A DNA stretch of 64,000 nt, from positions 372,001 to 436,000 of the IMG/VR virus record IMGVR_UViG_3300027996_002186; one strand, 5' to 3'. The number at the start of each line of letters is the position of its first letter. The first letter of the stretch is position 1. Made by a program: the position numbers and the translations under genes. The notes beneath the pieces are model-generated. The model made no database searches and was not told the DNA's origin. It worked only from the letters and a program-made list of their open reading frames with translations. This document shows positions 4,092-62,749 of the stretch, piece by piece.

Positions 4092-4173
4092 AACATTATA
4101 TATTAATATCATGAAATCAGAATCATGTTATCTCACTCATTATTCAAAATGTATATTTCGAATATGTAATAAT

Positions 4174-5199: not shown

Positions 5200-5233
5200 A
5201 TAGAATATATATTAAATATACTTAATTGTTTGA

Positions 5234-7078
5234 TTATTTTAATAACTCTGTTTTTCTTAGATCAGAGTTTTTACCAAACCAAATATTAAGAGAGTCTTTT
5301 GAAACATCATCTTTGGTTATAAGTGTTAACCTAGGTCTGTTTATAATATCTTCATACTCATCATCAACTAGAGCTGCTAAACCTTTCTTATACTTAATAT
5401 CATATTTCTTTAAGTCTTTATTCTTCTCCCATTCATTATATTCACTTTGATTATAGAATAGAATTTTCTTTTCTTTCTTAGCTCTTGGTATAGCTACCAC
5501 GATTGGTGTTTCAACCTTATATAACATACGTCTTTCGAACATATCTGGCCAATACTTATAAAAGAAGTTTATCAATAATGCGGCAATTGCATTTCCATCA
5601 ACATCAGCATCAACATATAAAAGAACTCGGCCATACCTAAGTGATTTTAATTCAATATCATGGCCCAATTTCAACCCAATAGAGGCCATTAAGTTAACCG
5701 CCTCTGTATTCTGAACTAATTTCTGACTTGATATATCAGACACGTTTATAAACTTACCTTTCAATGCAAAGGCTCCCATTGATTGAGAATCTCTATACTT
5801 TCTAAAAGCACCAGCAGCAGAATCTCCCTCAAATAACCCTAGTGAATACTTCCATCTATCCTTACCCTTAGCATCAATAAGTTTTTCAACCTTTATCTTA
5901 GATAACTTTTTATTTAGATTTCTTTGTAATTTATTCTCATCTGCATTTTTCTTTTGTTCTATCCAATCTAATATAGAGTTAACTATTTCGGATTTCAATA
6001 TAGATTGAACCATCTTCTTACTAACTTCAAAGGAAGTTCCAAAATCTTTAATCTCAGTAATTAACTTTTCTTTCGTCTGTGATGAGAATGATGGGTTAAT
6101 AACAGTAGAGTCTAAGAATAAGAACATATGGTTCTTTAATTCTGACGGTTTAACATCAGTCTTATGTTTCTTCAAGAAATAGGCTCTAAGATCTAATATA
6201 ATTTGATTCATAATATAATCTACGTGCGTACCACCATCATAAGTTTCTGTTGAGTTAGCAAAACTAACTTGTTGGAATCCATTTTCTGATAAAGCAATAC
6301 CAACAGACCAACTATTACCCTTTTTAGTTTCAAAGAAAAAGTCATCAACATATAATTTTATATAATCTTCATATGATTTGAAATTAATAACTTTACCATT
6401 GAAATAGATTTTAATCTTAGTGTTACATGCGGCTAAATCATAAACTCTTTTTTCCAATAATTGATAGTGTGATTCATCTAAACCATCCATCGTGAATTTC
6501 TCAAAATCTGGATTGAATGATATTTTAGTATGACTCCTGGTAGCCTTTTTAATCTTAGGAGAAGTTCTTTCTCTCATATTGTTAGTAAATGTCTGACTAA
6601 ATTGATTTTTACCATCACAAGTCTCAATAGTGAACTCATTTGAGTATATGTTTGTTAGTGTAGATCCAACACCATTAGTACCAGCCCAAGATCTTTCTTC
6701 ATCATCATTGAAATTAGAACCAGCTTTAAGGTTTGAGAATATCATCTCCGGAATCCACTCTTTATGTTCTTTGTGTTTAACAACTGGTATACCACCATTA
6801 TCCCAAATAGATATTGAATTCTTATCCTTATCTATTGTTACTTTAATTATATTAAGTTTGGATCCTTTTCTTTTACTCTCATCAACTGAATTAGTAATTA
6901 TCTCATCAAATATTTTTAGAAATCCCGGATTGTATGTTATTTCTTTTTGAATTGCCTTCTCTCCTTCGATTAACCATTTGTTAGATGTGTGTGGTTTTAT
7001 AGAACCGATATACATTCCAGGTCTTAGTATAACGTGGTCTATATCATCTAACTTCTTGAATTTCTTATCTATCGACAT
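5234..7078 (-). CDS. DNA topoisomerase II large subunit (T4 gp39+gp60-like; GyrB/ParE-type ATPase + TOPRIM)
   Basis: HVILRPGMYIGS, EIITNSVDE, DNGGIP, GTNGVG, EGDSA, DADVDG, YKKGL. Confidence 0.97.
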   Translation of the reverse strand: MSIDKKFKKLDDIDHVILRPGMYIGSIKPHTSNKWLIEGEKAIQKEITYNPGFLKIFDEIITNSVDESKRKGSKLNIIKVTIDKDKNSISIWDNGGIPVVKHKEHKEWIPEMIFSNLKAGSNFNDDEERSWAGTNGVGSTLTNIYSNEFTIETCDGKNQFSQTFTNNMRERTSPKIKKATRSHTKISFNPDFEKFTMDGLDESHYQLLEKRVYDLAACNTKIKIYFNGKVINFKSYEDYIKLYVDDFFFETKKGNSWSVGIALSENGFQQVSFANSTETYDGGTHVDYIMNQIILDLRAYFLKKHKTDVKPSELKNHMFLFLDSTVINPSFSSQTKEKLITEIKDFGTSFEVSKKMVQSILKSEIVNSILDWIEQKKNADENKLQRNLNKKLSKIKVEKLIDAKGKDRWKYSLGLFEGDSAAGAFRKYRDSQSMGAFALKGKFINVSDISSQKLVQNTEAVNLMASIGLKLGHDIELKSLRYGRVLLYVDADVDGNAIAALLINFFYKYWPDMFERRMLYKVETPIVVAIPRAKKEKKILFYNQSEYNEWEKNKDLKKYDIKYKKGLAALVDDEYEDIINRPRLTLITKDDVSKDSLNIWFGKNSDLRKTELLK

Positions 7079-29276: not shown

Positions 29277-30248
29277 ATGAAAAATCTATTAATAACCATA
29301 TTACTATCAATAACAAATACTATACCAGCTATGTGCACACTGGTTGTAGATAATGGTAATTGGAGTAGTGCTTCATCTTGGGATTGTGGGTATATACCTG
29401 CATCGGATGGGGATACTATGGTTATCCCTTCTTCTATGACTGTTGTAGTTGATTTAAACAGCCCTACCTATGTTGATATGAGGATTGAAGTTTATGGAAC
29501 AATGCAGTTCAGTAATGGAAAGAAAATCAACATGGATAGTGATGGTATTGTTGAAATTTATACTGGAGGAACATTAACCGGTGGTAATTCTGGTTCTAGA
29601 TTAACGATAGGTGGAACTACTTGGTGGAGTGGAACAGATCCTCCCTTAATAGGCCCAACCATTGTTAGTAATAGCGGGTTTTTACCAATTGAATTAGTAG
29701 AATTTAATGCTATTGTAAATGAAGATAGAGTAGAAATATCATGGACAACTGCATCCGAAATAAACAATGACTATTTTATTGTTGAGAAAAGTAAAGATAC
29801 ATTTATATGGAGTAAGGTAATTGAAGCCAAGGGAGCAGGTAATAGTAATATCATAATCAATTATTTTGAAATTGATAACAACCCACTAATGGGGCTATTT
29901 TACTATCGCCTCACTCAAGTCGATTTTGATGGTAAGCAAGAGACATTTAATATTATTCCTGTTGAAAACGCTATAAAAGGTGAGGGTATTATGAACATCT
30001 ACCCCAACCCAGTAAATAAAGGAGAATGTATTAGTCTTTCATTTGAAAGTTTACATCGAGATAAGCAGGGAATTCTAGTTGTTCTTAGAGACATAAGAGG
30101 TAATGAAGCATATTCTATAATAAAATTTGTTGATTGTAAAGATGGGTTGGTTGTTATTGATATTCCTCATCACCTTACATCAGGCACATATTTAGTAGTT
30201 GCTACTTCTGAAAATTTATTATACAGTAAAAAAATAATCATAAAATAA
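29277..30248 (+). CDS. Secreted protein with type IX secretion (type A) C-terminal sorting domain
   Basis: Signal peptide; GNWSSASSW G8-like beta region; LPIELVEFNA..WTTASEINNDYF..YYRLTQVDFDG; CTD IYPNPV..GTYLVV..KKIIIK. Confidence 0.88.
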   Translation: MKNLLITILLSITNTIPAMCTLVVDNGNWSSASSWDCGYIPASDGDTMVIPSSMTVVVDLNSPTYVDMRIEVYGTMQFSNGKKINMDSDGIVEIYTGGTLTGGNSGSRLTIGGTTWWSGTDPPLIGPTIVSNSGFLPIELVEFNAIVNEDRVEISWTTASEINNDYFIVEKSKDTFIWSKVIEAKGAGNSNIIINYFEIDNNPLMGLFYYRLTQVDFDGKQETFNIIPVENAIKGEGIMNIYPNPVNKGECISLSFESLHRDKQGILVVLRDIRGNEAYSIIKFVDCKDGLVVIDIPHHLTSGTYLVVATSENLLYSKKIIIK

Positions 30249-30628
30249 TGATAATCAAGGGCGATCAAAGTACTCCATACGTAAAGTTAGATAAAGAAAA
30301 CTGTACACTTACTATTATAGGTAAATCTTACCCAGAACACCCATCATTATTTTATGATCCGATAGTGGAAGAGATTGATAAATGTAAAAGTGATTTGGGA
30401 AAATCTAAAATCACAATCAGAATAGCATTAGAAATATTAAATTCAGTTTCAACTAAATACCTTTTCCATTTGGTAAAAGAGTTATATGAATCAGCTATGG
30501 AGACGGAGGTTAATTGGTATTATGAAGAAGATGATGAAAGTATGTTAGAAGAAGGTAATTATTTAAAATCATCCCTCCCTAAATCAAATTTTAATTTAAT
30601 AGGTGTGTTGGATCTTAGATCAATCTAA
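30248..30628 (+). CDS. SiaC family (DUF1987) regulatory phosphoprotein
   Basis: STPYV, GKSYPE..FYDPI, NSVSTK, VNWYYEEDDESMLEEG. Confidence 0.85.
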   Translation: MIIKGDQSTPYVKLDKENCTLTIIGKSYPEHPSLFYDPIVEEIDKCKSDLGKSKITIRIALEILNSVSTKYLFHLVKELYESAMETEVNWYYEEDDESMLEEGNYLKSSLPKSNFNLIGVLDLRSI

Positions 30629-30710
30629 TAGTCTTGTAATATTCTAACCATTCTTCACTTTGACCAGAAATGAACTCCGGTGTTAAACAAGTTGGTATTT
30701 TTAATCATTT

Positions 30711-31085
30711 TTATCTCTTCTTGTCTAACAGAAGTCGAACAGATCGAAGAATATCTGTGTGATCAAATGGTTTAAATATGTAATCAGCGGCTCCTAAATT
30801 CATTCCTTTTTGAAGGTCCAAAGTATCTACTTTTGCTGTTACAAATAGGAAAGGAGGAATTACTTCCGTTGTCCAAATCAATTGTAACTCCCAGAGTAAT
30901 TCAAACCCGTCTAATTCAGGCATAGCAACGTCACAAATAACCAAGTCTGGACAATCTTTCATAATTGCATCATAACCTAATCTACCATTAGTAGCAGTTG
31001 AAACTTTGTATCCTGATAATTCAAATATTTCTTGTAATGTTTCTCGGATGTTTATATCATCTTCAACAATTAGTATGTGATCCAT
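30711..31085 (-). CDS. Single-domain response regulator receiver
   Basis: ILIVEDD, ICDVAMPELDG, VTAK, YIFKPF. Confidence 0.93.
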   Translation of the reverse strand: MDHILIVEDDINIRETLQEIFELSGYKVSTATNGRLGYDAIMKDCPDLVICDVAMPELDGFELLWELQLIWTTEVIPPFLFVTAKVDTLDLQKGMNLGAADYIFKPFDHTDILRSVRLLLDKKR

Positions 31086-38913: not shown

Positions 38914-38961
38914 CAAGTTATATATTAAAATAAGTAATAAGGATTTTTAATATATACTTTG

Positions 38962-39648
38962 ATGGAACATTTAGATAAATATAAATCTTTTAGTATAAAC
39001 GAAGCTGATGAAAAGGAAGTTGAATCGAAAGAGCAACCAAAACGATCAGAGAGAGTTTTGAACCAAGCTCAAAAAGAATGGGATGATGAACAAGAATCCG
39101 GTATAGAAAAAACTGAAAACATGCCAACTATGCTATTTAGTGATGTTGTTGGTTCTTCTAAGATGTGGTCTGATGATCCACTAAGTATGTCAAAGCAATT
39201 ATTAGATCATCATGAACTTGTAAATAATTTATCTGAAAAATATGGTGGATGGGTTGTTAAAACAATCGGTGACGCTTTTATGGTATACTTTGAAAGTAGT
39301 GATAAATCTTTAGTAAATGCTCTTAAATTCTCAAAAGATTTAACTAAATTAGAGAAAAAATATAAACTAAGAATAGGTGTTTGTTCTGGTAATATGGAAG
39401 CCAGATCTTATAGATTACAAAAGGTTGACTTAAAAGATTTCTTCGGGAATGCTGTTAATACCGCTTCTAGAATGGAATCTAAAGTATCTGATGCTAGAGG
39501 AGTAGCTTTCACATCAGTTAAACCAATTTCAAAAAAATTATTAAGTATAATAAAAAAGGAAGTTGGTAACTTAGATAAGGCTGATTTATCCAAGATTGAT
39601 TTAAAAGGTGTTACTGTTGATGCTGCTTATAAAATGAAATTTAGATAA
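38962..39648 (+). CDS. Class III nucleotidyl (probably adenylate) cyclase with CTS-like N-terminus
   Basis: FSDVVGSS, VVKTIGDAFMV, LRIGV, DFFGNAVNTASRMES; N-terminus MEHLDKYKSFSINE. Confidence 0.9.
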   Translation: MEHLDKYKSFSINEADEKEVESKEQPKRSERVLNQAQKEWDDEQESGIEKTENMPTMLFSDVVGSSKMWSDDPLSMSKQLLDHHELVNNLSEKYGGWVVKTIGDAFMVYFESSDKSLVNALKFSKDLTKLEKKYKLRIGVCSGNMEARSYRLQKVDLKDFFGNAVNTASRMESKVSDARGVAFTSVKPISKKLLSIIKKEVGNLDKADLSKIDLKGVTVDAAYKMKFR

Positions 39649-50081: not shown

Positions 50082-51065
50082 ATGAAAATTTTCAACGGAT
50101 CAACTAGTGAGAAATTAGCAAATAGTATTTGTAATATACTATGTGTAGAGTTTGACATCGATATCAAACCAGGCAAACTAAAGATAGACAAGTTCTTAGA
50201 TGGTGAGATATTGCCATTATTCGAAGAGACTGTTAGAGATGAAGATGTTTTCTTTATTCAATCAACAATGTCTTCTGATACAATTATGGAAACTCTATTA
50301 ATAATAGATGCTGCTAAGAGAGCAGGGTGTAAATCATTTACGTTAGTTTCTCCGTTTCAAGGATATTCAAGACAAGATAAAACAGACCATTTGAGATCAT
50401 CTATTGGTTCTAAACTATTAGCCGATATATTAGAGAAAGCTGGTATGACGAGAATTATCACTATTGACTTACACGCATCTGCTATTCAGGGATTTTATAA
50501 TGTTCCGGTTGTTCACCTTAATGGTAACAAGATATTCATTGAACATATCAAAAATAACCAAATTGATGATTTAACTATTATTGCACCTGATCAAGGAGCT
50601 GTTAAGAGAGCAACAGATTTCTGTAAAGCTTTCCCTGAAGCAACATTTGCAATGATTAATAAGAAAAGAATTAAACCAAATGAAATTCACTCTATGGAAT
50701 TGGTTGGTGATGTTGAGGGTAGAAATGTTGTTATCGTTGATGATATGGCTGATACACTTGGTACATTAAAAAAAGCTAGTGAATTGGTTATGAAGATGGG
50801 AGCTAAGAGTGTTAGAGCAATAGCTACACATGGAGTATTGAGTGGTAAAGCACTTGATAATTTAGAAACATCTATGTTAACTGAGTTAATGGTTTCTGAT
50901 AGTATCTCAACAGTTGTTGATAAAAAGTTTAATGAGTCATTGAAAAACAGAGAAGGTGTTATGGGTGGTCAAAAATTAAACATCATTTCTTGTGATAGAA
51001 TTTTAGCTAAGTCTATTAATTTTATCTCAAAGAAAAAGAGTATTCATGAATTGAATATAGTGTAA
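50082..51065 (+). CDS. prs: Ribose-phosphate pyrophosphokinase
   Basis: FLDGE, YSRQDK, DLHASAIQGFY, APDQGAVKRA, VDDMADTLGTL, ATHGVLSG. Confidence 0.95.
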   Translation: MKIFNGSTSEKLANSICNILCVEFDIDIKPGKLKIDKFLDGEILPLFEETVRDEDVFFIQSTMSSDTIMETLLIIDAAKRAGCKSFTLVSPFQGYSRQDKTDHLRSSIGSKLLADILEKAGMTRIITIDLHASAIQGFYNVPVVHLNGNKIFIEHIKNNQIDDLTIIAPDQGAVKRATDFCKAFPEATFAMINKKRIKPNEIHSMELVGDVEGRNVVIVDDMADTLGTLKKASELVMKMGAKSVRAIATHGVLSGKALDNLETSMLTELMVSDSISTVVDKKFNESLKNREGVMGGQKLNIISCDRILAKSINFISKKKSIHELNIV

Positions 51066-51080
51066 AAAATAATAATTAGT

Positions 51081-51446
51081 ATGAAAGTATTTTTAGTAGA
51101 TATAGATGGAACCTGTTGTGATGATATTAGTAATGAAGATTCACACTTATATGCAACTGCAAAAGTTATTGAGGGTTCATTAGAACAAATTAATAAGTGG
51201 TATGATGATGGACATCATATTACATTTTTCACGGCTCGTGAATCAAAAGATAGAGATGTTACAATAAAATGGTTAGATGATAATGGGTTTAAATATAATG
51301 GCCTAATAACAGATAAACCAAGGTGTAAAGGTGAGGATGATGAATATATCTGGATAGATAATCGTAAAGTACGCGGGATAACATATAGTGAAGTGTGGGG
51401 AGATTTGAAGAAAGTGAATAAAGAAATTTTAACATTCGGAGACTAA
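51081..51446 (+). CDS. Small HAD-superfamily phosphatase
   Basis: LVDIDGT, FFTAR, KP, WIDN. Confidence 0.85.
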   Translation: MKVFLVDIDGTCCDDISNEDSHLYATAKVIEGSLEQINKWYDDGHHITFFTARESKDRDVTIKWLDDNGFKYNGLITDKPRCKGEDDEYIWIDNRKVRGITYSEVWGDLKKVNKEILTFGD

Positions 51447-51460
51447 AAATAACCTTTGTA

Positions 51461-53006: not shown

Positions 53007-53486
53007 ATGATTAAGATAATTGTAGCAACTTCGAAAAATAGAGTCATTGGTAATGATAACTCTTTGATATGGAATTTACCATCAGATTTGAAGCACTTCA
53101 AGAAACTAACAACTGATAATTCAATTGTTATGGGTAGGAAGACTTATGAATCAATTGGTAGACCTTTACCAAATAGAAGAAATATAATAATAACAAGACA
53201 AGAAGATTATGAGGTGGATGATTGTGAGGTTGTTGGTTCATTAGAAGAAGCTTTATTATTATGTGGTTCTAATTGTTTTATAATTGGTGGAGGTGAGATA
53301 TATAAACAGTCAATTAATATAGCTGATAAAATATATCTCACCCTTATTGATGAGGAGTTTGAAGGAGATACTTATTTTCCTGAGATTGATGAGGATTGGG
53401 TAGAAGTGATAAGAGAGAATAAAGAACAGGATGATAAAAACGAGTATAATTATTCATTTATAGAATATGAAAGATATAAATTTTAA
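53007..53486 (+). CDS. folA: Dihydrofolate reductase
   Basis: VIGNDNSLIW, DLKHFK, VMGRKTYESI, PLPNR, IIGGGEIY, GDTYFP. Confidence 0.97.
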   Translation: MIKIIVATSKNRVIGNDNSLIWNLPSDLKHFKKLTTDNSIVMGRKTYESIGRPLPNRRNIIITRQEDYEVDDCEVVGSLEEALLLCGSNCFIIGGGEIYKQSINIADKIYLTLIDEEFEGDTYFPEIDEDWVEVIRENKEQDDKNEYNYSFIEYERYKF

Positions 53487-54042
53487 GGGTAAATTAATAA
53501 TGATAATGGGTCCTCCTGCTAGTGGTAAATCAACATTAGCTTCTGAGGTACACACTGAATTGAAAAAGAGAAATATTAATTCTGTTTTTGTAGGTGAATC
53601 TGCAACTGATTATATTGCTGAGTATGGTATTCCAGATTCACCTAATGATCAAATGGTTATCTTTTATAAACAATTGAATAAGGAATTAATGTTTTTAGAT
53701 AGTAAGGATTATATAATATGTGATTCTAGTTCGATTCTAAATTATTTCTATTTCAGAAATTTATTCGATTCTAAACTATCTAATAAAGATATAGCATCAA
53801 TAAATCATTTACAGAAGGAAATATTAAAACACATAAATACGATTGATGAAATATTTTATGTACCAGCTATGTCAGTTAATGATAGTGATGATGGTATTAG
53901 ATTTCATGATAAAGGTGAGATTGAGAAGTTAGGAACTTGGATAAAGTCTTATTTAGAAATAGAAAATATAAAACATATTGATTTATCTAATGAGAATATG
54001 GATAATAGAGTTGATTTTATAATAAAAAGTTTAATAAAATAA
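53467..54042 (+). CDS. P-loop kinase/ATPase, AAA_28/NadR-like
   Basis: GPPASGKST, ESA, ICDSS, DDGIR. Confidence 0.75.
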   Translation: MKDINFKGKLIMIMGPPASGKSTLASEVHTELKKRNINSVFVGESATDYIAEYGIPDSPNDQMVIFYKQLNKELMFLDSKDYIICDSSSILNYFYFRNLFDSKLSNKDIASINHLQKEILKHINTIDEIFYVPAMSVNDSDDGIRFHDKGEIEKLGTWIKSYLEIENIKHIDLSNENMDNRVDFIIKSLIK

Positions 54043-54044
54043 AT

Positions 54045-54239
54045 ATGATAATAATTAAAACAGAAAAGAAAATTGGTGAATTTTTAGATAACTCATCCGT
54101 TGATAATATTCCTTTAAGAAGAATCAATTCTTTGGATGAATTAAAAGAATTTGAAGATGACGATTACCAAATAATAAAAATGCCATCGACACCGATTATA
54201 GATATAGAAAAGGCTAAAGGAAATTCTTTTAGAAGGTAG
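54045..54239 (+). CDS. Small hypothetical protein
   Basis: 64-aa ORF at end of operon. Confidence 0.55.
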   Translation: MIIIKTEKKIGEFLDNSSVDNIPLRRINSLDELKEFEDDDYQIIKMPSTPIIDIEKAKGNSFRR

Positions 54240-54240
54240 A

Positions 54241-54672
54241 TTATTTATAAACCTTAAATGGAAGACTTTTAGATTTATAACCTTTAAAATCCTCTCTAAA
54301 CTCTTCAAGTCTAGGTTCTATCTCGTCAGATTTTATTATCCAAAATTGAGCACCAGCTGCTATTGCTTTCGCTTTTTCGGATTCCTCGTTGGATGAGGAT
54401 ATTATTCCGACAACCACCTCATTTCCGTATTCAAAATTTATCTTTCTAATCAATTCTATACCATCGAAAGAACTACCTAATATATTTAAATCTATAAAGG
54501 CACAACTAGGTTTTCCTTTACCACTCTCAAACCATTCTTTAAACATATTACTAGCATCATCTGAACTAGACACACTTGTAAGGCTTAATGTTATATCTAA
54601 AAGACTGCAAGCGTCTTCGAAGACTAGGTGGAATAAGTCTTCATCATCTACTAATAATATTGAATCAATCAT
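54241..54672 (-). CDS. Single-domain response regulator receiver
   Basis: LLVDDED, FIDLNI (phospho-Asp), ISSS, IIKS; start overlaps the kinase stop. Confidence 0.9.
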   Translation of the reverse strand: MIDSILLVDDEDLFHLVFEDACSLLDITLSLTSVSSSDDASNMFKEWFESGKGKPSCAFIDLNILGSSFDGIELIRKINFEYGNEVVVGIISSSNEESEKAKAIAAGAQFWIIKSDEIEPRLEEFREDFKGYKSKSLPFKVYK

Positions 54673-55925
54673 AATGGTATTTCTATTTTTATTTTAGTTC
54701 CTATTTTTATTTTTTCACTACTAACACCAAAACCATGTTCTTTCATTATCGCTAAACATATGTTTAACCCTAATCCCGTTCCAGACTCTTGTTGTTTATT
54801 TTTTCTTATATATGGTTTAGATAAGTCTTCAAATTCCTTTTGCGACATCCCTCTTCCATTGTCTTCTATTATTAGTAAATTTCTATACGAACCTCTATCT
54901 TTATTGTATTTCGCTTCATCCATATATATCTTAACTAACTTTGAATCACTGTCATTATATTTTAACCCATTTCTTATTAGGTTATCTACAGCAGTACAAA
55001 ATAAAGATTCATTAACGTTACATTCTATTAAATTTTCTATAATAACTTGTTTTGAGTATGCGGTAGTACTTAGGTGTGATTTTAATATATCCTTTAAATT
55101 AAAAATTTCTCTTTCTAATGTAGCATCTTTTTTAACAAGATTTGTAAATTCTTTAACACCAGTATATACTTTTTGTGAGTGTTTTAACCCTTCCTCTATT
55201 AACTTTAAAGAGGATTCTAGTTTTAATTTTTTAATAATTTCGGGAGACATCTTTCTTTTTAAAGAACGTAAACCTCTTGGCATATAGGTGTTTATCCCAC
55301 TATGCATATCGTGTCTTAATATTTTTGCAGCATGTTCTAGGTAGGAGTTGGTTTTTTCTATCTCAGCTTTTTGTTCTACCATTTCTGTTATATTGTTTAC
55401 TACTTTTAGTATCTTATAACATTTACCATTACCATCTAGAATAGGGTTGTAATTACCATTGATGTGAACCTCATCACCTTCACTATCTATTCTCACAAAT
55501 TCACCACTTTTAAATTCACCATCTCTTAAATCTTTCCAAAACTTTTTATATTTAAGTGTGTTTTTATATTCATGTTTAACGAACATACTATGATGTTTAC
55601 CTTTAACCTCTTCTATTGTATAACCAAATATGTCTAGGAAATTTTGGTTTGCTTTAATTACGTGTCCATCAGGACAAAATTCTATTACAGAATTAGATTT
55701 GTTAATAGCGTCTAACATGTTGGAATTGAAATTGGAGTTATTACCTATATTTTCTTTTAGTATAATACAAAAAGGTGGTAAAAATAATAACAAACTAATA
55801 AACTCATACCAATCTGTATATACCGAAGAATTAATAAATCCAGATAACAACATAACTTTAACTACAAAAAAAGTAATTATAATAAGGAAAGATGTGTAAA
55901 TTGATATGTGGAAACTTTTGTTCAT
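54669..55925 (-). CDS. Membrane PAS/PAC sensor histidine kinase
   Basis: Two TM helices; PAS AINKSNSVIEF..ANQNFL..GKHHSMFV..FWKDL..YNPILD; H-box LRHDMH, N-box NLIRNGLKY, DNGRGM, GTGLGL. Confidence 0.92.
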   Translation of the reverse strand: MNKSFHISIYTSFLIIITFFVVKVMLLSGFINSSVYTDWYEFISLLLFLPPFCIILKENIGNNSNFNSNMLDAINKSNSVIEFCPDGHVIKANQNFLDIFGYTIEEVKGKHHSMFVKHEYKNTLKYKKFWKDLRDGEFKSGEFVRIDSEGDEVHINGNYNPILDGNGKCYKILKVVNNITEMVEQKAEIEKTNSYLEHAAKILRHDMHSGINTYMPRGLRSLKRKMSPEIIKKLKLESSLKLIEEGLKHSQKVYTGVKEFTNLVKKDATLEREIFNLKDILKSHLSTTAYSKQVIIENLIECNVNESLFCTAVDNLIRNGLKYNDSDSKLVKIYMDEAKYNKDRGSYRNLLIIEDNGRGMSQKEFEDLSKPYIRKNKQQESGTGLGLNICLAIMKEHGFGVSSEKIKIGTKIKIEIPL

Positions 55926-55998
55926 AACTTATTAATTTTATTTAATCGATGAACAGGTTTGAGTTATATCGGAAATCTATCCCAAACCATCTCGAACA

Positions 55999-56277
55999 TC
56001 ACATTTGGTCAAGATTATCATCGGTATATTCACCCGGATAGTCGTCTTCGTCCTCACCAAGTATAGTATTGATTACTTCTCTAGTATATTTATCTGTCAG
56101 AAATGAGACAAAATTATCTAAGGTTGTATGACAAGATGAGTGTACATCATTTTCTTTATGAAAATCATCTAAGTCTGTGAAAAAATCTAAGGTTTTCCAT
56201 GGTCCTTCTTCCTCTTCTTGCATCTCTAAAATTCGATTGACTTTAGTATTTTCATTAAACCTATTTATATGTTTCAT
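55999..56277 (-). CDS. Small acidic protein, CTS-like N-terminus
   Basis: MKHINRFNEN. Confidence 0.7.
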   Translation of the reverse strand: MKHINRFNENTKVNRILEMQEEEEGPWKTLDFFTDLDDFHKENDVHSSCHTTLDNFVSFLTDKYTREVINTILGEDEDDYPGEYTDDNLDQM

Positions 56278-56289
56278 AATCTTTTATTT

Positions 56290-56949
56290 TTATTTTGAAA
56301 GTAATCTAATTAAATCCTCAGTTATTATAGTTATAAGCTTTTTACCTTCAACTGTAACAAGTGGTATATTTTTAACCATTGAATACTTATCATTACCATC
56401 AACATAAACAGATTCTAGTAATTTTTTAAGTTTAGGTTCATTTTTATATTTATCAATATAATAAGATTTTAATTCAGTTACAAATTTACCTAAATCAACA
56501 CCTTCTTTATAGTTATATTTAACCATTTGAAGTTCGTTATCTTGTTTCTCAACCATTATATACCAGATTGATTTCTTAGGTACTTTAACATTTTCAAGGA
56601 AGTTATAAGCTTTAGAAGCTTTAATATTCTTAGGGAATTTAGCAATTTTACCAAAAGTCTCAACCTCTTTATTTTCATTCTCCTCTTCAAACTCATATCC
56701 GAAATCTTCGTTTTCATCATCATTAGATAAATTAATATCTTGATCTTCTGGCATCAGATTCTTTCTAGATGCTGGTTTCTCAATCTTTTTAGAGTCAAGT
56801 GGTAAATTTGGATTCATAGGAATATCAGAATCTTTAAATCCATTAAAGGGTAATGATGGATCTATTTCCTTAATCTTTTTAGATTCGGTTTTAATATCAG
56901 AGAATTTTCTGAAACCTACTATTTTCTTATTGTTTGACTTATCTGACAT
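56290..56949 (-). CDS. Hypothetical late protein
   Basis: TAATATATA upstream; 219 aa. Confidence 0.7.
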   Translation of the reverse strand: MSDKSNNKKIVGFRKFSDIKTESKKIKEIDPSLPFNGFKDSDIPMNPNLPLDSKKIEKPASRKNLMPEDQDINLSNDDENEDFGYEFEEENENKEVETFGKIAKFPKNIKASKAYNFLENVKVPKKSIWYIMVEKQDNELQMVKYNYKEGVDLGKFVTELKSYYIDKYKNEPKLKKLLESVYVDGNDKYSMVKNIPLVTVEGKKLITIITEDLIRLLSK

Positions 56950-56998
56950 TCGTTTAAATTACTTTTGTTTATTATATATTAAAATTTGAAATGGTTTT

Positions 56999-57253
56999 TT
57001 ATCCTTGTTGTTTATAGTAATATTTATCCACCATGTAGTTCTTAAAATTCTTCATAACATTCATATGGTCGAAATTTATAGAAACTAAGGGTTGTAATTT
57101 TTTAAGGAAAGTATTCATGACATCATTCTCATACATATAAGGTGATAATGATTTATCAAGTAAATTATTTTCATAATCAAAATTTGAATCATCATCATCA
57201 TGTCTGTGTTTCATGTAATTAAGTTCACTAAGTTGTTGTCTATCGTATAACAT
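56999..57253 (-). CDS. Small protein coupled to baseplate gene (possible baseplate component)
   Basis: Start overlaps stop of the gp6-like gene. Confidence 0.55.
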   Translation of the reverse strand: MLYDRQQLSELNYMKHRHDDDDSNFDYENNLLDKSLSPYMYENDVMNTFLKKLQPLVSINFDHMNVMKNFKNYMVDKYYYKQQG

Positions 57254-58980
57254 TATATACCCGCTCTATTTTTTGAATCAACAATACCCTTTTTAATAAT
57301 ATTTACTGATTTTAAACCACCACCATCTATATTATCAGAATAATATAGACCGTTTCTATCATACCAACCACCTCTAATAACCGGTATTTCATCTGCTTCA
57401 AATATTATATCATCAAGAACCGGATCTAAACCAATAACTTTATTTGAAATATAATTTGGATCAGCTTTTGGTGTTGATATATCAACATTTATCTTAGAAT
57501 CAAAATTTGATAATTTGTTTTCAACATTTATTTTATTTTCTTTGTGGTAATCCTCATTCTTTTTACACATGAATTGAAGATCAATAGAGTGTACATCATT
57601 TATTGTTGATAGTTCTCTTATTATATCAAGCTTTGGTATTCTATCTATTCTTTTTAAGTCTAAAAAGTATTCTGATATCTTATCTAATATTTGTGCATTA
57701 ACCGAATCGTCAGTTGCATCCGAATAATTCATAACGAATATATTCATTATATAATATGATATTTTTGGTGAATCTACTCTATATTTTCTTGTTAATTGTA
57801 ACTGTCCTCCTGTCCTAAGATATTTATCTATCTTAGATTTCTCATATCTATCAAGCTCAAAAGCTTTTATATCAATTGTGAAATAATCAGCATTTCGATT
57901 CTTAAATAATCTTATATTTGGTGTAGCGACAATAAATATTGTTCCGAATCTCTCATAAGCATTTACATGTGAGAAAACTCCTAACTTCTTAATCTCATAC
58001 GCATATTGTTGTGGTAATCCTAAAACAAAGTTATTACTCGATATTGGTAATATATTTTTTGTAAATAATAGATTTTCAGCATCAGCACCAAAGTTTATAT
58101 CTGTATAAATATCTATGTTGAATACATCAGCGACATCCATGGTTTCACCATTTCCATCTAATACATTTCCAACAAACTCCCAATCATCTCTTGTTCTTCT
58201 AAATATGTTACCAGTCGATCCATCAGATACTAAATAATTTACCTCTATTGAGGAACCAATTGGTGGTTTCAATCCGAACCCACCATTACCAAAAACAATA
58301 TCTACACCACCGTTAAATCCAGTTCTAACAACACAAGCTTGTTCATCAGGCAACATTTCATAAATATGCTTTTTTAATGACCAAAAATCACCATTAACCA
58401 ATATTTCAACGTTGAAGTTCTCGATATCTTTTTGGCTTATTTCTGATAATGATAATGTTTGTAATTGTGTTCCATCACCTGTATAAGTTTTTCTCATCCA
58501 TTTACCTTGTATTATTGGTACGAAGAATTTATAATTAGGAGTTATTTTGTGTGTTACTTTTTCAGTTCCAATACTAAATGAGTAATCAAGAGCGTTTGTT
58601 TTATTCTTAATCAATAATCTATTATTAAATGTCAATCTTGATCCAGGTATTTGATCGGCCACATCAAGATTTGATTTTAAGGTAAACTTCAAAGTACCAG
58701 TAGCACTTATTGATCTACCCGGGATATGTCCAGCAAAAATTGCCGCATTTCTTATAACTTTCCTATTTAAAGCATTTGGGTTACTTAAATCAAATTGGTC
58801 AATTGAATTCTTCAAATATAAGATTGACATTTGGTGTAAATTTTCAATAACAGATAATATCTGACCATATGGAGAAGCAGGACTAAAAAGAAGACCCGCT
58901 TTGTTATGTTCTTTTTTTAAATACCTTTCTATCTCAGCCTTAATACCGGTAAAAGTTATTGATGAAAAATTAGTAGCCAT
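57253..58980 (-). CDS. Baseplate wedge subunit (T4 gp6-like / baseplate J family)
   Basis: ASPYGQILSV, AIFAGHIPGRSISATG, IVFGNGGFG..P, YLVSDGSTGN, FGADAE. Confidence 0.8.
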   Translation of the reverse strand: MATNFSSITFTGIKAEIERYLKKEHNKAGLLFSPASPYGQILSVIENLHQMSILYLKNSIDQFDLSNPNALNRKVIRNAAIFAGHIPGRSISATGTLKFTLKSNLDVADQIPGSRLTFNNRLLIKNKTNALDYSFSIGTEKVTHKITPNYKFFVPIIQGKWMRKTYTGDGTQLQTLSLSEISQKDIENFNVEILVNGDFWSLKKHIYEMLPDEQACVVRTGFNGGVDIVFGNGGFGLKPPIGSSIEVNYLVSDGSTGNIFRRTRDDWEFVGNVLDGNGETMDVADVFNIDIYTDINFGADAENLLFTKNILPISSNNFVLGLPQQYAYEIKKLGVFSHVNAYERFGTIFIVATPNIRLFKNRNADYFTIDIKAFELDRYEKSKIDKYLRTGGQLQLTRKYRVDSPKISYYIMNIFVMNYSDATDDSVNAQILDKISEYFLDLKRIDRIPKLDIIRELSTINDVHSIDLQFMCKKNEDYHKENKINVENKLSNFDSKINVDISTPKADPNYISNKVIGLDPVLDDIIFEADEIPVIRGGWYDRNGLYYSDNIDGGGLKSVNIIKKGIVDSKNRAGI

Positions 58981-59041
58981 TTTAATTTATTAATTTATTT
59001 TAGTTGTAATTTAGTTATCCTTTATCACTCGATTTATTTTA

Positions 59042-59782
59042 TTATAGTAATGATAATAAATCATCTATATTACTATTTAACCAAGTAGTTAATTGTTTAG
59101 CAATAATTGTTTTAGCTTCATCATCATTAACATTTATCCAGTCCCCAACCTTTTTAGTGAATAAACCATGAGTATCACCTAAGTACAACCCATCAGTTCT
59201 GTTTCTACCATAGTCATTAACACCAACATTAGACTTAATTTTTTTAACTAAATCTAATTTATCAATTTTATTAAAATGTTTTATAAGTTTTTCATTGGAT
59301 AATATATCATCTAGTACTGTGTTAAGTTGATTAAGAACATTGATAGATACATCAGCCATATCCCAAGTAATTTGACCATCACTAATTTTATCCATTTCTA
59401 TCTTCATATTACTAACTAAGTCTCGTGACTTATCAATCATTTCTCCTGTTCTATTGAATATAGATAGTTCATTTATATATTCTGAGTTAAATCTATTTTT
59501 TTCAAAAATATCTTTAACATCTTCTATGAATAAACTAATTGAAGAGTTTCTATTCACTAAATCTGAATTCTCATTCAATGGGTTGGTAAAATATTTCCAA
59601 TTGAAATTATCACCTTCTAAATCGGTTTTAGAAACAATTAATTTTAGATTCTTATCACCTTCTAAAATAGACAATTCAATATAGTTTCCTAGTTTTATGT
59701 CACTTTTCTCGAATATAATAACTTCATCGAAGTTATTCGATAACTCAATGTGTATCCTGTTTATATTTTGTTTAAGGTTCAT
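59042..59782 (-). CDS. Hypothetical late protein
   Basis: First gene of the late unit that contains the baseplate gene. Confidence 0.7.
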   Translation of the reverse strand: MNLKQNINRIHIELSNNFDEVIIFEKSDIKLGNYIELSILEGDKNLKLIVSKTDLEGDNFNWKYFTNPLNENSDLVNRNSSISLFIEDVKDIFEKNRFNSEYINELSIFNRTGEMIDKSRDLVSNMKIEMDKISDGQITWDMADVSINVLNQLNTVLDDILSNEKLIKHFNKIDKLDLVKKIKSNVGVNDYGRNRTDGLYLGDTHGLFTKKVGDWINVNDDEAKTIIAKQLTTWLNSNIDDLLSLL

Positions 59783-61055: not shown

Positions 61056-61407
61056 ATACATAAAATCATTTATATTGTTTGAATCTGATAACATAAATTC
61101 GGATGAAATACCTTGGGAGGTCTTTTGGGAATTTATACAAGATTCTCAAGACGTTTTTATGGAAATAATGGATGATGATTTATTATTAAGTGATTATGGT
61201 AAATACTCTTTTGATTATCAAGATGATTTTATTTTCTTAAAGTTTAAAAAGCCAACAGATTTAGAAACAATTTCTTTTTTATGGGAAGATATTAAAATAG
61301 CAATTAATAGATTGAGTGATAAATATAATATTACTCATAAAGTATCCGATTTACCTGGTATAATTAAGTTAGTTGTTACGTTGGAGAATCAATCCATTAA
61401 ACCATAA
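61039..61407 (+). CDS. Hypothetical protein, CTS-like N-terminus, dispersed paralog family
   Basis: Start moved to ATG 61039 (MPNTNKYIKSFILFES); DSQDVFMEIMDD; AINRL. Confidence 0.7.
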   Translation: MPNTNKYIKSFILFESDNINSDEIPWEVFWEFIQDSQDVFMEIMDDDLLLSDYGKYSFDYQDDFIFLKFKKPTDLETISFLWEDIKIAINRLSDKYNITHKVSDLPGIIKLVVTLENQSIKP

Positions 61408-61928
61408 ACATCATCAGCATTAAACTCTGGGTCGGTTATTTTCAAATCACAATCGATGAAATTGTTAAAATCTATTTCATCCGAATCTAATCTACGTTTG
61501 ATAGAATCATTCTTATCTTCTCTTGTATGTAATCTAGATTCTCTTATATTTCTATCAATATCTAAATAAACAACAAAACAACACTTTCTTTGTTCTTCTG
61601 TGATGTCTTTGAATTCACCAGGAGTCATTATCATAACTTGTGATGAGTTAAACTCATCTTTAGTTAATCCATAATACCACTTTTCTTTATCAGAATCTTC
61701 TGGTGTAACCTCAAATTCTTGGTGTGTTAGGAATTTATTTTCATTGATTGATTGTAAAAATTCAGAATCATCTACGAAGTTATAAGTAGAACCTTGTTCT
61801 TCAAATTTTCTTTTTGGTCTTGTTGTCCACTTTAGACAGGGTTTTAGACCTTTATCAGATAATTTTCTTAATAGAAAGTCTTTCCCCGATCCACTAGGTC
61901 CCATTATTATACATTTTTCATTTTTCAT
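61389..61928 (-). CDS. gmk: Guanylate kinase-like protein
   Basis: GPSGSGKD, TTRPKRKFE, YNFV, WYYG, IKRRL. Confidence 0.88.
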   Translation of the reverse strand: MKNEKCIIMGPSGSGKDFLLRKLSDKGLKPCLKWTTRPKRKFEEQGSTYNFVDDSEFLQSINENKFLTHQEFEVTPEDSDKEKWYYGLTKDEFNSSQVMIMTPGEFKDITEEQRKCCFVVYLDIDRNIRESRLHTREDKNDSIKRRLDSDEIDFNNFIDCDLKITDPEFNADDVYGLMD

Positions 61929-61939
61929 TTCTAATTATA

Positions 61940-62749
61940 TTATCTTTTATCAATTTGTTCATATCTCCAATAGAATCCACGAGATTTCCTATTAATATTC
62001 TTACAACAAAATGAAATATTAGAAGAGTTACTACCTACATGATTTGCAGCTTCTTTGATAGATTTAAATTCCCCAACTAGTTGATTATCATTATCATATT
62101 GATATACTTTCTTACCTATTTTTTCTTTCCTAGTCATATCCACTTTCACCAATTCACTACCGTCATCATATTTCCAAATGAACTTTCTGTGGTGCTTTCT
62201 TATACCGGTTAAACAAGCTGATATTTTACCTGTGCTAAAAAAACCATCACTTTCAACAACAGCGTCTTTAATACACTTATACTTCTTTATTATGTTATAG
62301 TTTATATCATATTGTATTATTGATTTATAACTATTGATATTAGGAATCCCAATTAATTTATTTTTAATTTTCTGCTTGGTTTCTTCACTACAAGGAACTC
62401 CTTTGTTATGTGGTGTATTTCCTTTCTTAAAGGATCCTTTATTACCAAAGGTAGATCCATCACCACCTGATGTATAATTAACTAATGAAAATCCCCATGT
62501 TTTGAATAATGATATATAGAACATTTCCCAATATTGCCATTCAGATACCGGAACCTCATCTATAATAATTAACTCAGGTCTAAATCCATCCTTTCTAACG
62601 TTGTTAATCCAATTTCTTTTATGTGTATTCTTATCCCTAGCAGAATTAAAGTGATTTGTGTATCTATCTTTCGGATTGTTGGCTTTCCCAATATACCTAA
62701 TTTGGTTATTTCTGGGATCAGATAGAGCATATATAAAAACATTTTTCAT
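61940..62749 (-). mobile_element. Free-standing GIY-YIG homing endonuclease with NUMOD3/NUMOD1-type DNA-binding repeats
   Basis: FIYAL..RYIGKA, WEMFYI, NYTSGGDG, SEETKQKI, two QYD..SIKEAA..FxW HTH-type modules. Confidence 0.9.

What the first reader, a model, noticed from the sequence alone, without database searches (positions are those of the whole stretch)
54241..55925. Complete two-component system (membrane PAS kinase + receiver) in a phage late region
Seen: a kinase with intact H, N, G1 and G2 boxes and a PAS/PAC domain of the type found in BdlA/Aer-like sensors. It overlaps a receiver-only regulator by ATGA and is co-oriented downstream of late genes. There is no DNA-binding output domain. 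Inference: the phage senses host redox or energy state and signals by protein contact, for example to time lysis. With the second receiver, SiaC, the cyclase and the phosphatases, this is an unusually rich signalling set.
Basis: partly seen in the sequence, partly recalled or inferred. Interest (0 to 1): 0.6.

Follow-up and report, generated by a model that had tools for sequence, protein, structure and literature searches.

The report
Phage-borne two-component signalling module
A very large marine phage carries an intact sensor kinase and partner receiver protein from a signalling family found almost only in uncultured phages, where it is usually wired to a small membrane protein, so these viruses seem to run their own sense-and-respond circuit inside the host.

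Summary
Window 54669-55925(-) encodes a 418-aa kinase with a 2-helix membrane hairpin, one PAS domain, a DHp helix carrying H205, and a CA domain with N, G1, F and G2 boxes. It overlaps by ATGA a 143-aa receiver-only regulator at 54241-54672(-).

The pair is not a sporadic host-derived insert. It belongs to a family found in at least 478 IMG/VR viral contigs. The family is missing from all 50,697 GenBank phage records, and turned up in only five MAG loci among 185,579 species genomes. Its usual form is a three-gene operon: kinase, 143-aa receiver, then a coiled-coil protein with two C-terminal membrane helices. That third protein is itself virus-specific.

Here the module is split. The window holds kinase plus receiver. 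A more complete 483-kb record of the same phage holds a paralogous receiver plus the membrane protein about 400 kb away, with no kinase beside it.

Selection is purifying (dN/dS 0.27 and 0.05). Evidence for expression is weak. The closest complete relative (LR745206.1) lacks the module.

The signal (redox?) and the output (lysis timing?) remain inference. SiaC, a second receiver and a class III cyclase are real. No PP2C, SpoIIE or GGDEF match was found.

The parts
54669..55925 (-). Sensor histidine kinase, 418 aa. Layout: 2-helix membrane hairpin, PAS, DHp, CA.
   Evidence: ORF. Pfam PAS_9/PAS_3/HATPase_c. AF2 model with pLDDT 82.5. Foldseek top hits are WalK, YF1 and VicK.
55743..55925 (-). 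Residues 1-61: two hydrophobic helices (3-27, 35-61) joined by a loop of about 7 residues. This is a membrane anchor with no extracytoplasmic sensor domain.
   Evidence: The Kyte-Doolittle peak is above 1.6 over residues 13-26 and marginal (1.74) at 51. AF2 places helices here at pLDDT 80-90. The segment is conserved in the 94%- and 91%-identical proteins P0001 and P0002 and in L027.
55392..55736 (-). PAS domain, residues 64-178.
   Evidence: Pfam PAS_9 E 1.2e-12. TIGR00229 at 55.8 bits. Nearest solved structures are MmoS PAS (E 4e-7) and Aer PAS (E 6.5e-7).
55137..55388 (-). DHp helical hairpin, residues 180-263. The phospho-acceptor H205 is encoded by codon 55311-55313, within 'ILRHDMHSG'.
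   Evidence: H205, D206 and S209 are invariant in 22 homologues. 64 of 67 related kinases carry RHD[ML]HSG. The phmmer alignment to HK853 starts at residue 236. Pfam HisKA gave no hit.
54672..55109 (-). Catalytic ATP-binding (CA) domain, residues 273-418, with N, G1, F and G2 boxes.
   Evidence: HATPase_c at 50.1 bits. The box residues are invariant. Match to HK853 at E 7e-10.
54669..54672 (-). ATGA overlap: the kinase stop codon (TGA) overlaps the receiver start codon (ATG).
   Evidence: Read directly from the sequence.
54241..54672 (-). Stand-alone response regulator, 143 aa. The phospho-acceptor D61 is encoded by codon 54490-54492. It has a conserved C-terminal tail, EIEPRLEEF..D...YK....FKVYK.
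   Evidence: Pfam Response_reg at 34.2 bits. Invariant D9, D10, D61, S92-94 and K114. AF2 model with pLDDT 90.6. Foldseek hits single-domain regulators such as 6xvu, 1i3c and 3ilh.
54043..56289 (.). Variable island relative to the closest complete phage, LR745206.1. It holds a 64-aa ORF (+), the receiver, the kinase and a 92-aa ORF. LR745206.1 has an unrelated 672 bp here.
   Evidence: The blastn synteny breaks at these points. tblastn finds no homologues of these four ORFs in that stretch. LR745206.1 has no kinase match anywhere.
55926..58980 (-). Co-oriented upstream genes: a 92-aa ORF (55999-56277), a 219-aa ORF (56290-56949), an 84-aa ORF (56999-57253) and the baseplate wedge gp6-like gene (57253-58980).
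   Evidence: ORFs. phrog_219 at E 3e-26. The same order is seen in L027 at 96% nucleotide identity.
30711..31085 (-). Second, unrelated CheY-like receiver, 124 aa. This is context only and is not a member of the 143-aa family.
   Evidence: Response_reg at 90 bits. Only 24% identity to the family over 67 residues.
30248..30628 (+). SiaC/DUF1987 phosphoprotein homologue (context).
   Evidence: PF09345 at 100 bits. NF038265 scores 50.5 bits, below its cut-off of 150.
38959..39648 (+). Class III adenylate/guanylate cyclase domain protein (context).
   Evidence: PF00211 at 69 bits.

Best explanation
The two genes are a working, phage-resident two-component pair. They form the kinase-plus-receiver half of a phage-specific signalling module.

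Proposed mechanism:
1. The kinase is held at the inner membrane by a hairpin with no outside domain. Its single cytoplasmic PAS domain senses an intracellular cue.
2. The kinase autophosphorylates on H205 and passes the phosphate to D61 of the 143-aa receiver.
3. It probably also serves the paralogous 144-aa receiver encoded about 400 kb away in the same phage. Both receivers have the same alpha-1 helix, the usual kinase-docking surface.
4. The receivers have no output domain and act by contact. The most likely target is the family's third member, a protein with a small N-terminal cytoplasmic domain, a coiled coil of variable length and two C-terminal membrane helices. In most phages it is translationally coupled to the receiver. 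In this phage it sits next to the second receiver.
5. The circuit therefore converts a state of the infected cell into a change at the cell membrane.

Shown here: the gene anatomy, conservation of the catalytic residues, the phage-specific distribution, the three-gene synteny, purifying selection, and the split arrangement.

Inferred: phosphotransfer, the cross-feed to the second receiver, binding to the membrane protein, the nature of the signal, and the physiological output.
For: Intact motifs and folds.

Kinase followed by a 143-aa receiver: seen in every homologous locus examined, at kinase identities of 45-94% and GC contents of 0.28-0.66.

Distribution:
- At least 478 IMG/VR viral contigs carry the receiver family. 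In the best 80, all have the third gene directly downstream, and 64 have the PAS kinase directly upstream.
- 64 of 67 complete upstream ORFs carry the H-box.
- The third protein's ESM Atlas look-alike clusters are 94-100% viral.
- Only 5 MAG loci appeared in the scan of 185,579 species genomes.
- 0 of 300 other genomes of the phylum of G002 had a match.
- No GenBank phage record has the receiver or the third protein.

Selection: dN/dS against the 95.5%-identical cassette in L028 is 0.27 for the kinase and 0.05 for the receiver.

Split arrangement: the 483-kb record G001 is 100% identical to the window over 13,254 nt. It holds the second receiver (76% identical) and the third protein (L032), with no kinase beside them, and only one kinase of this family in the whole record.

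Binding: co-folding the second receiver with residues 1-100 of the third protein gave ipSAE 0.51 against a best control of 0.01, rated 'weak support'. That mark was reached by 58 of 80 solved complexes and 2 of 110 mismatched pairs, but scores of 0.60 or less were seen in only 7 of those 80 solved complexes and in both mismatches that passed. The runs agreed in at least 97% of contacts and the partner's pLDDT was at least 84.

Expression: two metatranscriptome runs hold short contigs identical to parts of the kinase gene.
Against: - No biochemical data exist for any member of the family.
- Pfam HisKA does not recognise the DHp domain.
- The third gene is missing next to this pair and from the whole 312-kb record. 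The window's copy could therefore be a remnant.
- The closest complete relative, LR745206.1, has no such kinase at all, so the module is dispensable.
- The RNA evidence is four small contigs from one study, and DNA carry-over cannot be excluded.
- The co-fold pass is in the weak range.
- The PAS cofactor is unknown. Aer's FAD-contact residues are not conserved.
- The sample of 80 loci was ranked by likeness to the second receiver, which is the third-gene-linked paralogue. This biases the synteny count.
Confidence: 0.55

Rival explanations
1. Host-interference reading. The phage kinase or receiver does not run a private circuit but plugs into host two-component pathways. The kinase could phosphorylate or dephosphorylate host regulators, or the receiver could act as a phosphate sink for host kinases, to reprogramme the Bacteroidota host.
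For: The receiver has no output domain. The window's pair lacks the third gene. The host is probably a member of Bacteroidota, a phylum rich in two-component systems; the host call rests on T9SS sorting domains in phage proteins. The receiver's best PDB sequence match is 3ilh, a stand-alone two-component response regulator from Cytophaga hutchinsonii.
Against: Kinase and receiver stay adjacent, and the receiver's alpha-1 helix stays invariant, across very diverged phages with GC from 0.28 to 0.66 and presumably different hosts. That pattern fits a closed pair. Close cellular relatives that could be cross-talk partners were not found in 300 other genomes of the phylum of G002.
Confidence: 0.15
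2. Lysis-timing reading. The circuit gates a holin-like membrane protein so that lysis is timed to the energy or redox state of the host.
For: The usual third gene encodes a protein with two conserved C-terminal membrane helices rich in polar residues (TWSN..GILLTN..S..GT). The PAS domain resembles FAD-binding PAS sensors. In L016 a phage holin gene lies about 6 kb from the module.
Against: The third protein matches no holin family. Phage_holin_9 scored E 0.13, which is not significant. The module has no fixed position near endolysin or holin genes and lies in different neighbourhoods in different phages. In this window there is no lysis gene nearby.
Confidence: 0.12
3. Decaying or hitch-hiking cassette. 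The window's pair is a truncated copy of the three-gene module, acquired by recombination into a variable island, and has no function of its own in this phage.
For: Nucleotide homology to L028 ends exactly at the borders of the two genes, and the third gene present in L028 is missing here. The pair sits in a 2.2-kb island that is absent from LR745206.1. The module is absent from that complete relative.
Against: Both ORFs are intact with all catalytic residues. dN/dS is 0.27 and 0.05. The same arrangement is kept in L027 at 96% identity. The short 2TM-PAS form of the kinase is itself conserved in other lineages at 57-59% identity (P0103, P0109, P0119). The phage keeps a kinase-less receiver plus third-protein locus that would need this kinase.
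Confidence: 0.1
4. Competition or exclusion reading. The sensor-to-membrane-effector circuit detects a second infection or envelope damage and alters the membrane, to exclude rival phages or to protect the infected cell.
For: About 10 of the 80 related loci add a second kinase that has a signal peptide and an extracytoplasmic part of roughly 350 aa in front of the same receiver. This points to envelope cues. The output protein is membrane-embedded.
Against: None of the three proteins matches any PADLOC defence model. There is no experimental hint. The window's kinase has no outside domain.
Confidence: 0.08

Closest known systems
Class I (HK853/EnvZ-like) PAS sensor histidine kinases, e.g. Thermotoga HK853-RR468, ThkA-TrrA, WalK/VicK, the engineered YF1
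   Same: The PAS, signalling helix, DHp and CA layout is the same. It has the H, N, G1, F and G2 boxes. The partner is a receiver encoded immediately downstream. HK853 matches at E 7e-10, and Foldseek top hits are 9a5d, 4gcz, 4i5s and 3a0r.
   Different: DHp helix 1 is too divergent for Pfam HisKA, and no NCBIfam equivalog reaches its cut-off. The family is almost confined to uncultured phages.
Aer / MmoS / NifL FAD-binding PAS sensors
   Same: These are the best solved matches to the PAS domain: MmoS at E 4e-7 and Aer at E 6.5e-7. The tryptophan equivalent to Aer W70 is conserved as W130, as is the GxxH motif (H112).
   Different: The Aer positions R57 and D60 (numbering recalled from memory, consistent with the offset in the 8dik alignment) align to K117 and Y120 and are not conserved in the family. 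The output here is a kinase, not an HAMP/MCP module. No cofactor has been shown.
Single-domain response regulators of the Rcp1/RcpB/bacteriophytochrome-RR type, and Cytophaga hutchinsonii 3ilh
   Same: They are stand-alone receivers of about 140-150 aa with a C-terminal extension, encoded next to a PAS-family kinase. Foldseek gives TM 0.76-0.77 to 6xvu and 3ilh. 3ilh is the best sequence match, at E 2e-7.
   Different: Sequence identity is only 17-27%. The family-specific tail EIEPRLEEF...FKVYK and the DLNIIGSSFDG loop are not seen in those proteins. The presumed partner is a virus-specific membrane protein.
Three-component systems with a small membrane protein in the operon (e.g. LiaFSR; own knowledge)
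   Same: A kinase with a minimal membrane anchor, a regulator, and a small membrane protein are encoded together.
   Different: No sequence relation was found. The gene order differs. The regulator here has no DNA-binding domain. It is unknown whether the membrane protein acts as an input or as an output.
Pseudomonas SiaABCD partner-switch
   Same: A SiaC/DUF1987 protein is present at 30248-30628 (PF09345, 100 bits).
   Different: No SiaA-type PP2C and no SiaD-type GGDEF cyclase was found in the record. NCBIfam SiaC scores 50.5 bits against a cut-off of 150. It is not linked to the kinase/receiver pair.

Membership tests
Sensor histidine kinase (class I, HisKA/HATPase_c type) | Bergerat-fold ATP-binding domain with N, G1, F and G2 boxes | tested here: met
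   HATPase_c scores 50.1 bits against a cut-off of 26.4. N315/N319, D355-G359, F365 and G382-G386 are invariant in 22 homologues.
Sensor histidine kinase (class I, HisKA/HATPase_c type) | Phospho-acceptor His followed by an acidic residue on DHp helix 1 (H-box) | tested here: met
   H205-D206 in 'LRHDMHSG' is invariant and lies on modelled helix 180-225. 64 of 67 family members keep it.
Sensor histidine kinase (class I, HisKA/HATPase_c type) | Match to the Pfam HisKA (PF00512) profile | tested here: not met
   No HisKA family appeared at E <= 0.01. The alignment to HK853 begins only at DHp helix 2, residue 236. This is a divergent DHp domain, not an absent one.
Sensor histidine kinase (class I, HisKA/HATPase_c type) | Autophosphorylation and phosphotransfer activity | not testable with these tools
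   Needs a biochemical assay.
PAS domain, Aer/MmoS-like FAD-binding subgroup | PAS fold | tested here: met
   PAS_9 scores 48.4 bits against a cut-off of 27. The model has a five-stranded sheet over 79-178 at pLDDT above 90.
PAS domain, Aer/MmoS-like FAD-binding subgroup | Flavin-contact residues and bound FAD | tested here: inconclusive
   The nearest solved structures are FAD-binding PAS domains. W130, equivalent to Aer W70, is kept. The Aer R57/D60 equivalents are K117/Y120 and vary in the family. The cofactor cannot be tested here.
Response regulator receiver (CheY-like), stand-alone | Acidic pocket, phospho-acceptor Asp, Ser/Thr after beta-4, Lys after beta-5 | tested here: met
   D9, D10, D61, S92-94 and K114 are invariant in 21 sequences. 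Response_reg scores 34.2 bits against a cut-off of 30.2.
Response regulator receiver (CheY-like), stand-alone | (beta-alpha)5 fold and absence of an output domain | tested here: met
   The AF2 model has pLDDT 90.6 and pTM 0.86, with five beta-alpha units plus one short C-terminal strand. The protein is 143 aa in total.
Phage HK-RR-membrane protein module (defined here) | Kinase with RHD[ML]HSG H-box directly upstream of a 143-145-aa receiver with the GAQFWI(I/V)K and EPRLE tail motifs | tested here: met
Phage HK-RR-membrane protein module (defined here) | Coiled-coil/2-TM 'third' gene directly downstream of the receiver | tested here: not met
   It is absent downstream of the window's receiver and from the 312-kb record. 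It is present elsewhere in the same phage, next to a paralogous receiver (G001, L032).
SiaABCD partner-switch system | SiaC together with a PP2C phosphatase (SiaA), a kinase (SiaB) and a GGDEF cyclase (SiaD) | tested here: not met
   SiaC is present. GGDEF, SpoIIE and PP2C_2 were not found in the record.
Known anti-phage defence systems (PADLOC) | Match of any component to a defence model | tested here: not met
   No hit for the kinase, either receiver or the third protein.

The most novel reading that the evidence does not exclude
Huge phages of Bacteroidota carry a virus-specific signalling circuit of their own: interchangeable sensor kinases, a dedicated 143-aa receiver, and a dedicated membrane protein. 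The phage uses it, independently of host regulators, to read the state of the infected cell or its envelope and to act on the cell membrane. In this phage the circuit has been split into two loci 400 kb apart that share one kinase. That would be a branched one-kinase, two-receiver network encoded by a virus.
Probability: 0.35. Interest if true: 0.8.

Novelty: new variant of a known kind. Interest (0 to 1): 0.62.

Why it matters
Two-component systems are the main sensing devices of bacteria. Phages are generally thought to read host state through host regulators or small peptide/quorum systems. This is a conserved kinase-receiver-membrane protein module that is almost confined to viruses. It occurs in at least 478 viral contigs, and this phage itself in marine and seawater metagenomes from at least 15 studies. 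It diversifies its sensor domains while keeping the transmitter and receiver constant. Large phages would then make environment-dependent decisions with their own hardware. The module offers a tractable three-protein system for asking what a phage needs to sense during infection. It is absent from every cultured or GenBank-deposited phage and from the reviews searched, so it appears to be undescribed.

Tried and rejected
- Sigma-70 promoter and terminator scan of 53800-59200: no more sites than in shuffles, and nothing informative around the pair.
- Pfam HisKA: no hit.
- NCBIfam: only generic domain-level similarity, no equivalog above cut-off.
- PADLOC: nothing for the kinase, the receivers or the third protein.
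- Pfam and PHROGs on the third protein: only insignificant coiled-coil or TM noise, e.g. Phage_holin_9 at E 0.13.
- GenBank phage records: tblastn of the kinase found only a PAS-only hit in MT836939.1. The receiver and the third protein found nothing.
- GGDEF, SpoIIE and PP2C_2 in the phage record: none. The one Metallophos hit lies outside the window.
- Remnant of the third gene downstream of the receiver (window 53401-54400): none, even at E 100.
- Literature: six searches and four papers read found no description of two-component systems in huge or jumbo phages.
- 'Host-derived sporadic insert' was considered and rejected as the main reading, because the family is phage-resident.
- The word search and family scans had already settled the protein's identity.
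- No phylogeny was built, so the direction of transfer between phages and the few MAG copies is open.
Full report
**What is there.** The window is part of a 312.7-kb IMG/VR virus record. They overlap by ATGA.

Pfam finds one PAS domain (PAS_9 48.4 bits, PAS_3 42.9 bits, residues 80-181) and HATPase_c (50.1 bits, residues 308-418) in the kinase. It finds Response_reg (34.2 bits against a cut-off of 30.2) in the receiver. HisKA is not recognised. An alignment of 22 homologues nevertheless shows an invariant H-box 'ILRHDMHSGINTY' (H205, D206), along with invariant N, G1, F and G2 boxes.

The AlphaFold2 model of the kinase (pLDDT 82.5) has these parts:
- a two-helix hairpin at residues 3-27 and 35-61;
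- a PAS domain at 64-178;
- a long helix running into the DHp domain, 180-263;
- a CA domain at 273-417.

Foldseek returns full-length PAS kinases: WalK, YF1, VicK and ThkA. The first N-terminal helix is strongly hydrophobic and the second only marginally so.

The receiver keeps D9, D10, D61, S92-94 and K114 in all 21 aligned sequences. It models as a (beta-alpha)5 receiver with one extra C-terminal strand (pLDDT 90.6). Its closest structures are single-domain regulators: 6xvu, 1i3c and 3ilh. It has no output domain.

**Where it sits.** The phage is a relative of the 634-kb Mahaphage LR745206.1, at about 81% nucleotide identity over syntenic stretches. That clade is predicted to infect Bacteroidetes (PMC7162821). 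T9SS sorting domains in phage proteins agree with that host.

Upstream on the same strand lie three small ORFs and a gp6-like baseplate wedge gene. That is the only recognisable structural gene in the area. The neighbours are a PRPP synthetase-like gene (my reading of the translation; not scanned against any family library), DHFR, a thymidylate-kinase-like ATPase, a glycosyltransferase, guanylate kinase, a sugar epimerase and a GIY-YIG endonuclease. 'Late region' is therefore only loosely true, and timing of expression is unknown.

Compared with LR745206.1, the stretch 54043-56289 is a replaced island. It holds a 64-aa ORF, the receiver, the kinase and a 92-aa ORF. The complete LR745206.1 genome has no such kinase anywhere.

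**The pair belongs to a phage family.** The word search returned thousands of hits, and the best 120 all scored E < 1e-131. Every genomic context I opened has a 143-aa receiver immediately after the kinase. These contexts look like phage DNA: mostly ORFs without Pfam families, a holin, a phage metallopeptidase, NUMOD endonucleases, and contigs up to 591 kb.

Across these loci the kinase is 45-94% identical and the receiver 58-98% identical, while GC ranges from 0.28 to 0.66.

Sensor architecture varies while the transmitter and receiver stay constant:
- 2TM-PAS, 397-419 aa, as here and in L008-L010;
- PAS-PAS, 474-550 aa;
- GAF-PAS-PAS, 656-717 aa.

By contrast:
- a pattern scan of 185,579 species genomes found only five close loci, all in MAGs with inconsistent taxonomy;
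- 0 of 300 other genomes of the phylum of G002 matched the DHp-CA core at E <= 1e-30;
- none of 50,697 GenBank phage records has the receiver or the third protein.

One MAG copy, on a 967-kb contig, has clearly cellular neighbours. The family is therefore not strictly viral.

**A third gene.** In most loci a gene follows the receiver directly, often overlapping it. Its product is 180-230 aa and consists of:
- a small conserved N-terminal domain;
- a coiled coil of variable length;
- two C-terminal membrane helices, the second nearly invariant (TWSNxFGILLTNAFSIVGTIMGVKY).

All 80 best IMG/VR loci have this gene, and 64 have the PAS kinase directly upstream of the receiver. That sample was ranked by likeness to the third-gene-linked receiver paralogue, so the count is biased. 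In about ten loci something else sits between the PAS kinase and the receiver: a second kinase with a signal peptide and a large extracytoplasmic part, a YceI protein, or a homing endonuclease.

The third protein matches no Pfam, PHROG, NCBIfam or PADLOC family. Its ESM Atlas look-alike clusters are 94-100% viral.

**The split arrangement in this phage.** The window's pair has no third gene. None is found in the 312-kb record, and there is no remnant downstream of the receiver.

A 3.5-kb contig, L028, carries the same kinase and receiver at 95.5% nucleotide identity, followed by the third gene. Homology to the window stops exactly at the borders of the two genes, so the pair behaves as a recombining cassette.

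The 483-kb IMG/VR record G001 is 100% identical to the window over 13,254 nt and is evidently the same phage, assembled more completely. It holds a second locus about 400 kb away (L032). That locus encodes a 144-aa receiver, 76% identical to the window's and with the same alpha-1 helix, followed by the third protein. No kinase lies beside it. Only one kinase of this family is present in G001.

The simplest reading is one kinase serving two paralogous receivers, one of which is coupled to the membrane protein. Co-folding that receiver with residues 1-100 of the third protein gave ipSAE 0.51 (three runs: 0.44-0.54) against a best control of 0.01, rated 'weak support'. The mark was reached by 58 of 80 solved complexes and 2 of 110 mismatched pairs, but scores of 0.60 or less were seen in only 7 of those 80 and in both mismatches that passed. 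The runs agreed in at least 97% of contacts and the partner's pLDDT was at least 84.

**Is it used?** Against L028, dN/dS is 0.27 for the kinase and 0.05 for the receiver. L027, at 96% identity, keeps the same arrangement and the full N-terminal hairpin.

The DNA occurs in marine and seawater metagenomes from at least 15 studies. Two metatranscriptome runs from one study hold short contigs identical to kinase positions 54895-55086 and 55561-55713, and two more nearby. These are assembled contigs and DNA carry-over cannot be excluded, so this is weak evidence of transcription.

**What it senses and does.** The PAS domain's nearest solved relatives are the FAD-binding PAS domains of MmoS and Aer. 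W130 matches Aer W70. The Aer R57 and D60 positions (recalled from memory; the numbering offset is consistent with the 8dik alignment) are K117 and Y120 here and vary in the family. Redox sensing is possible but not shown.

The output is unknown. Lysis timing, envelope remodelling, exclusion of rival phages and interference with host signalling are all open. No holin or defence family match supports any of them.

**The rest of the 'signalling set'.** The following are real:
- a conventional CheY-like receiver at 30711-31085(-), 90 bits;
- SiaC/DUF1987 at 30248-30628(+);
- a class III cyclase at 38959-39648(+).

The second HATPase_c hit in the record is a type II topoisomerase. No GGDEF, SpoIIE or PP2C_2 match was found, and the only Metallophos hit is outside the window. 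This is therefore not a SiaABCD system.

**Literature.** Six searches and four papers read gave no description of two-component systems in huge phages. These included the huge-phage clades paper, the marine megaphage paper, a jumbo-phage comparative genomics paper and a 2026 jumbo-phage review.

**Verdict.** The new points are the phage-specific family, its three-gene canonical form and its split arrangement in this phage. It is a new variant of a known kind of system. The mechanism downstream of the receiver is inferred.

**Constraints.** Read laying was given 5,901 letters.

Noticed in passing
window 29277-31085: A SiaC/DUF1987 gene (30248-30628, +) starts at the last base of a G8 plus T9SS-sorting-domain protein (29277-30248). 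It faces a conventional 124-aa CheY-like receiver (30711-31085, -). This may be a second, unrelated signalling unit. The T9SS domain points to a Bacteroidota host.
   Followed up: partly
window 38959-39648: A class III nucleotide cyclase domain protein of 229 aa (PF00211, 69 bits). It has weak likeness to the Pycsar cyclase PycC (PADLOC E 9e-5) and to phrog_29613. Neither flanking ORF has a family hit.
   Followed up: partly
L032:65-943 (G001, same phage, outside the window): Directly upstream of the kinase-less receiver/third-protein locus lies a 292-aa protein whose C-terminal half is a long run of CxxCxGxG-type cysteine repeats. Pfam gives a BSD2/DnaJ zinc-finger-like hit at 27.7 bits.
   Followed up: no
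L048:1560-2999, L064:1595-2986, L084:1667-2986, L094:1550-3004: In about ten related viral loci a second histidine kinase lies between the PAS kinase and the shared receiver. It has a signal peptide and an uncharacterised extracytoplasmic part of roughly 350 aa. This gives two sensors for one receiver.
   Followed up: partly
L070:2468-2992; L083:2531-2998: Other insertions occur inside the operon: a YceI-like protein (155 bits) in L070 and a NUMOD3 homing-endonuclease-like ORF in L083, both between kinase and receiver.
   Followed up: no
L008:9679-10205: In one of three near-identical contigs the third gene is split into 64-aa and 99-aa ORFs. Only residues 61-183 still align. The sister contigs L009 and L010 have it intact.
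   Followed up: no
window 51056-51460 versus L001:435-6001: LR745206.1 carries about 5.5 kb here that the window lacks. This is a second indel in the same 10 kb, so the region is a hot spot of gene turnover.
   Followed up: no
window 61940-62749: A GIY-YIG/HNH-type homing endonuclease gene lies next to a guanylate kinase gene (61389-61928).
   Followed up: no
whole record G000 versus G001: CheckV rates the 312.7-kb record 91% complete. Yet a 483-kb record is 100% identical over the 13 kb compared and holds genes missing from the shorter one. The completeness estimate is unreliable for this phage group.
   Followed up: partly
L023 (VGMW01000001.1, 967-kb MAG contig): This is the only copy with clearly cellular neighbours (TauE, SoxA-type cytochrome c, TetR, ABC1 kinase). 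The PAS-rich sensor region and the kinase core lie in two separate ORFs (3813-5360 and 5502-6779). There is no third gene. A Peptidase_M15_3 gene lies nearby, as it does next to the phage copy in L011.
   Followed up: partly
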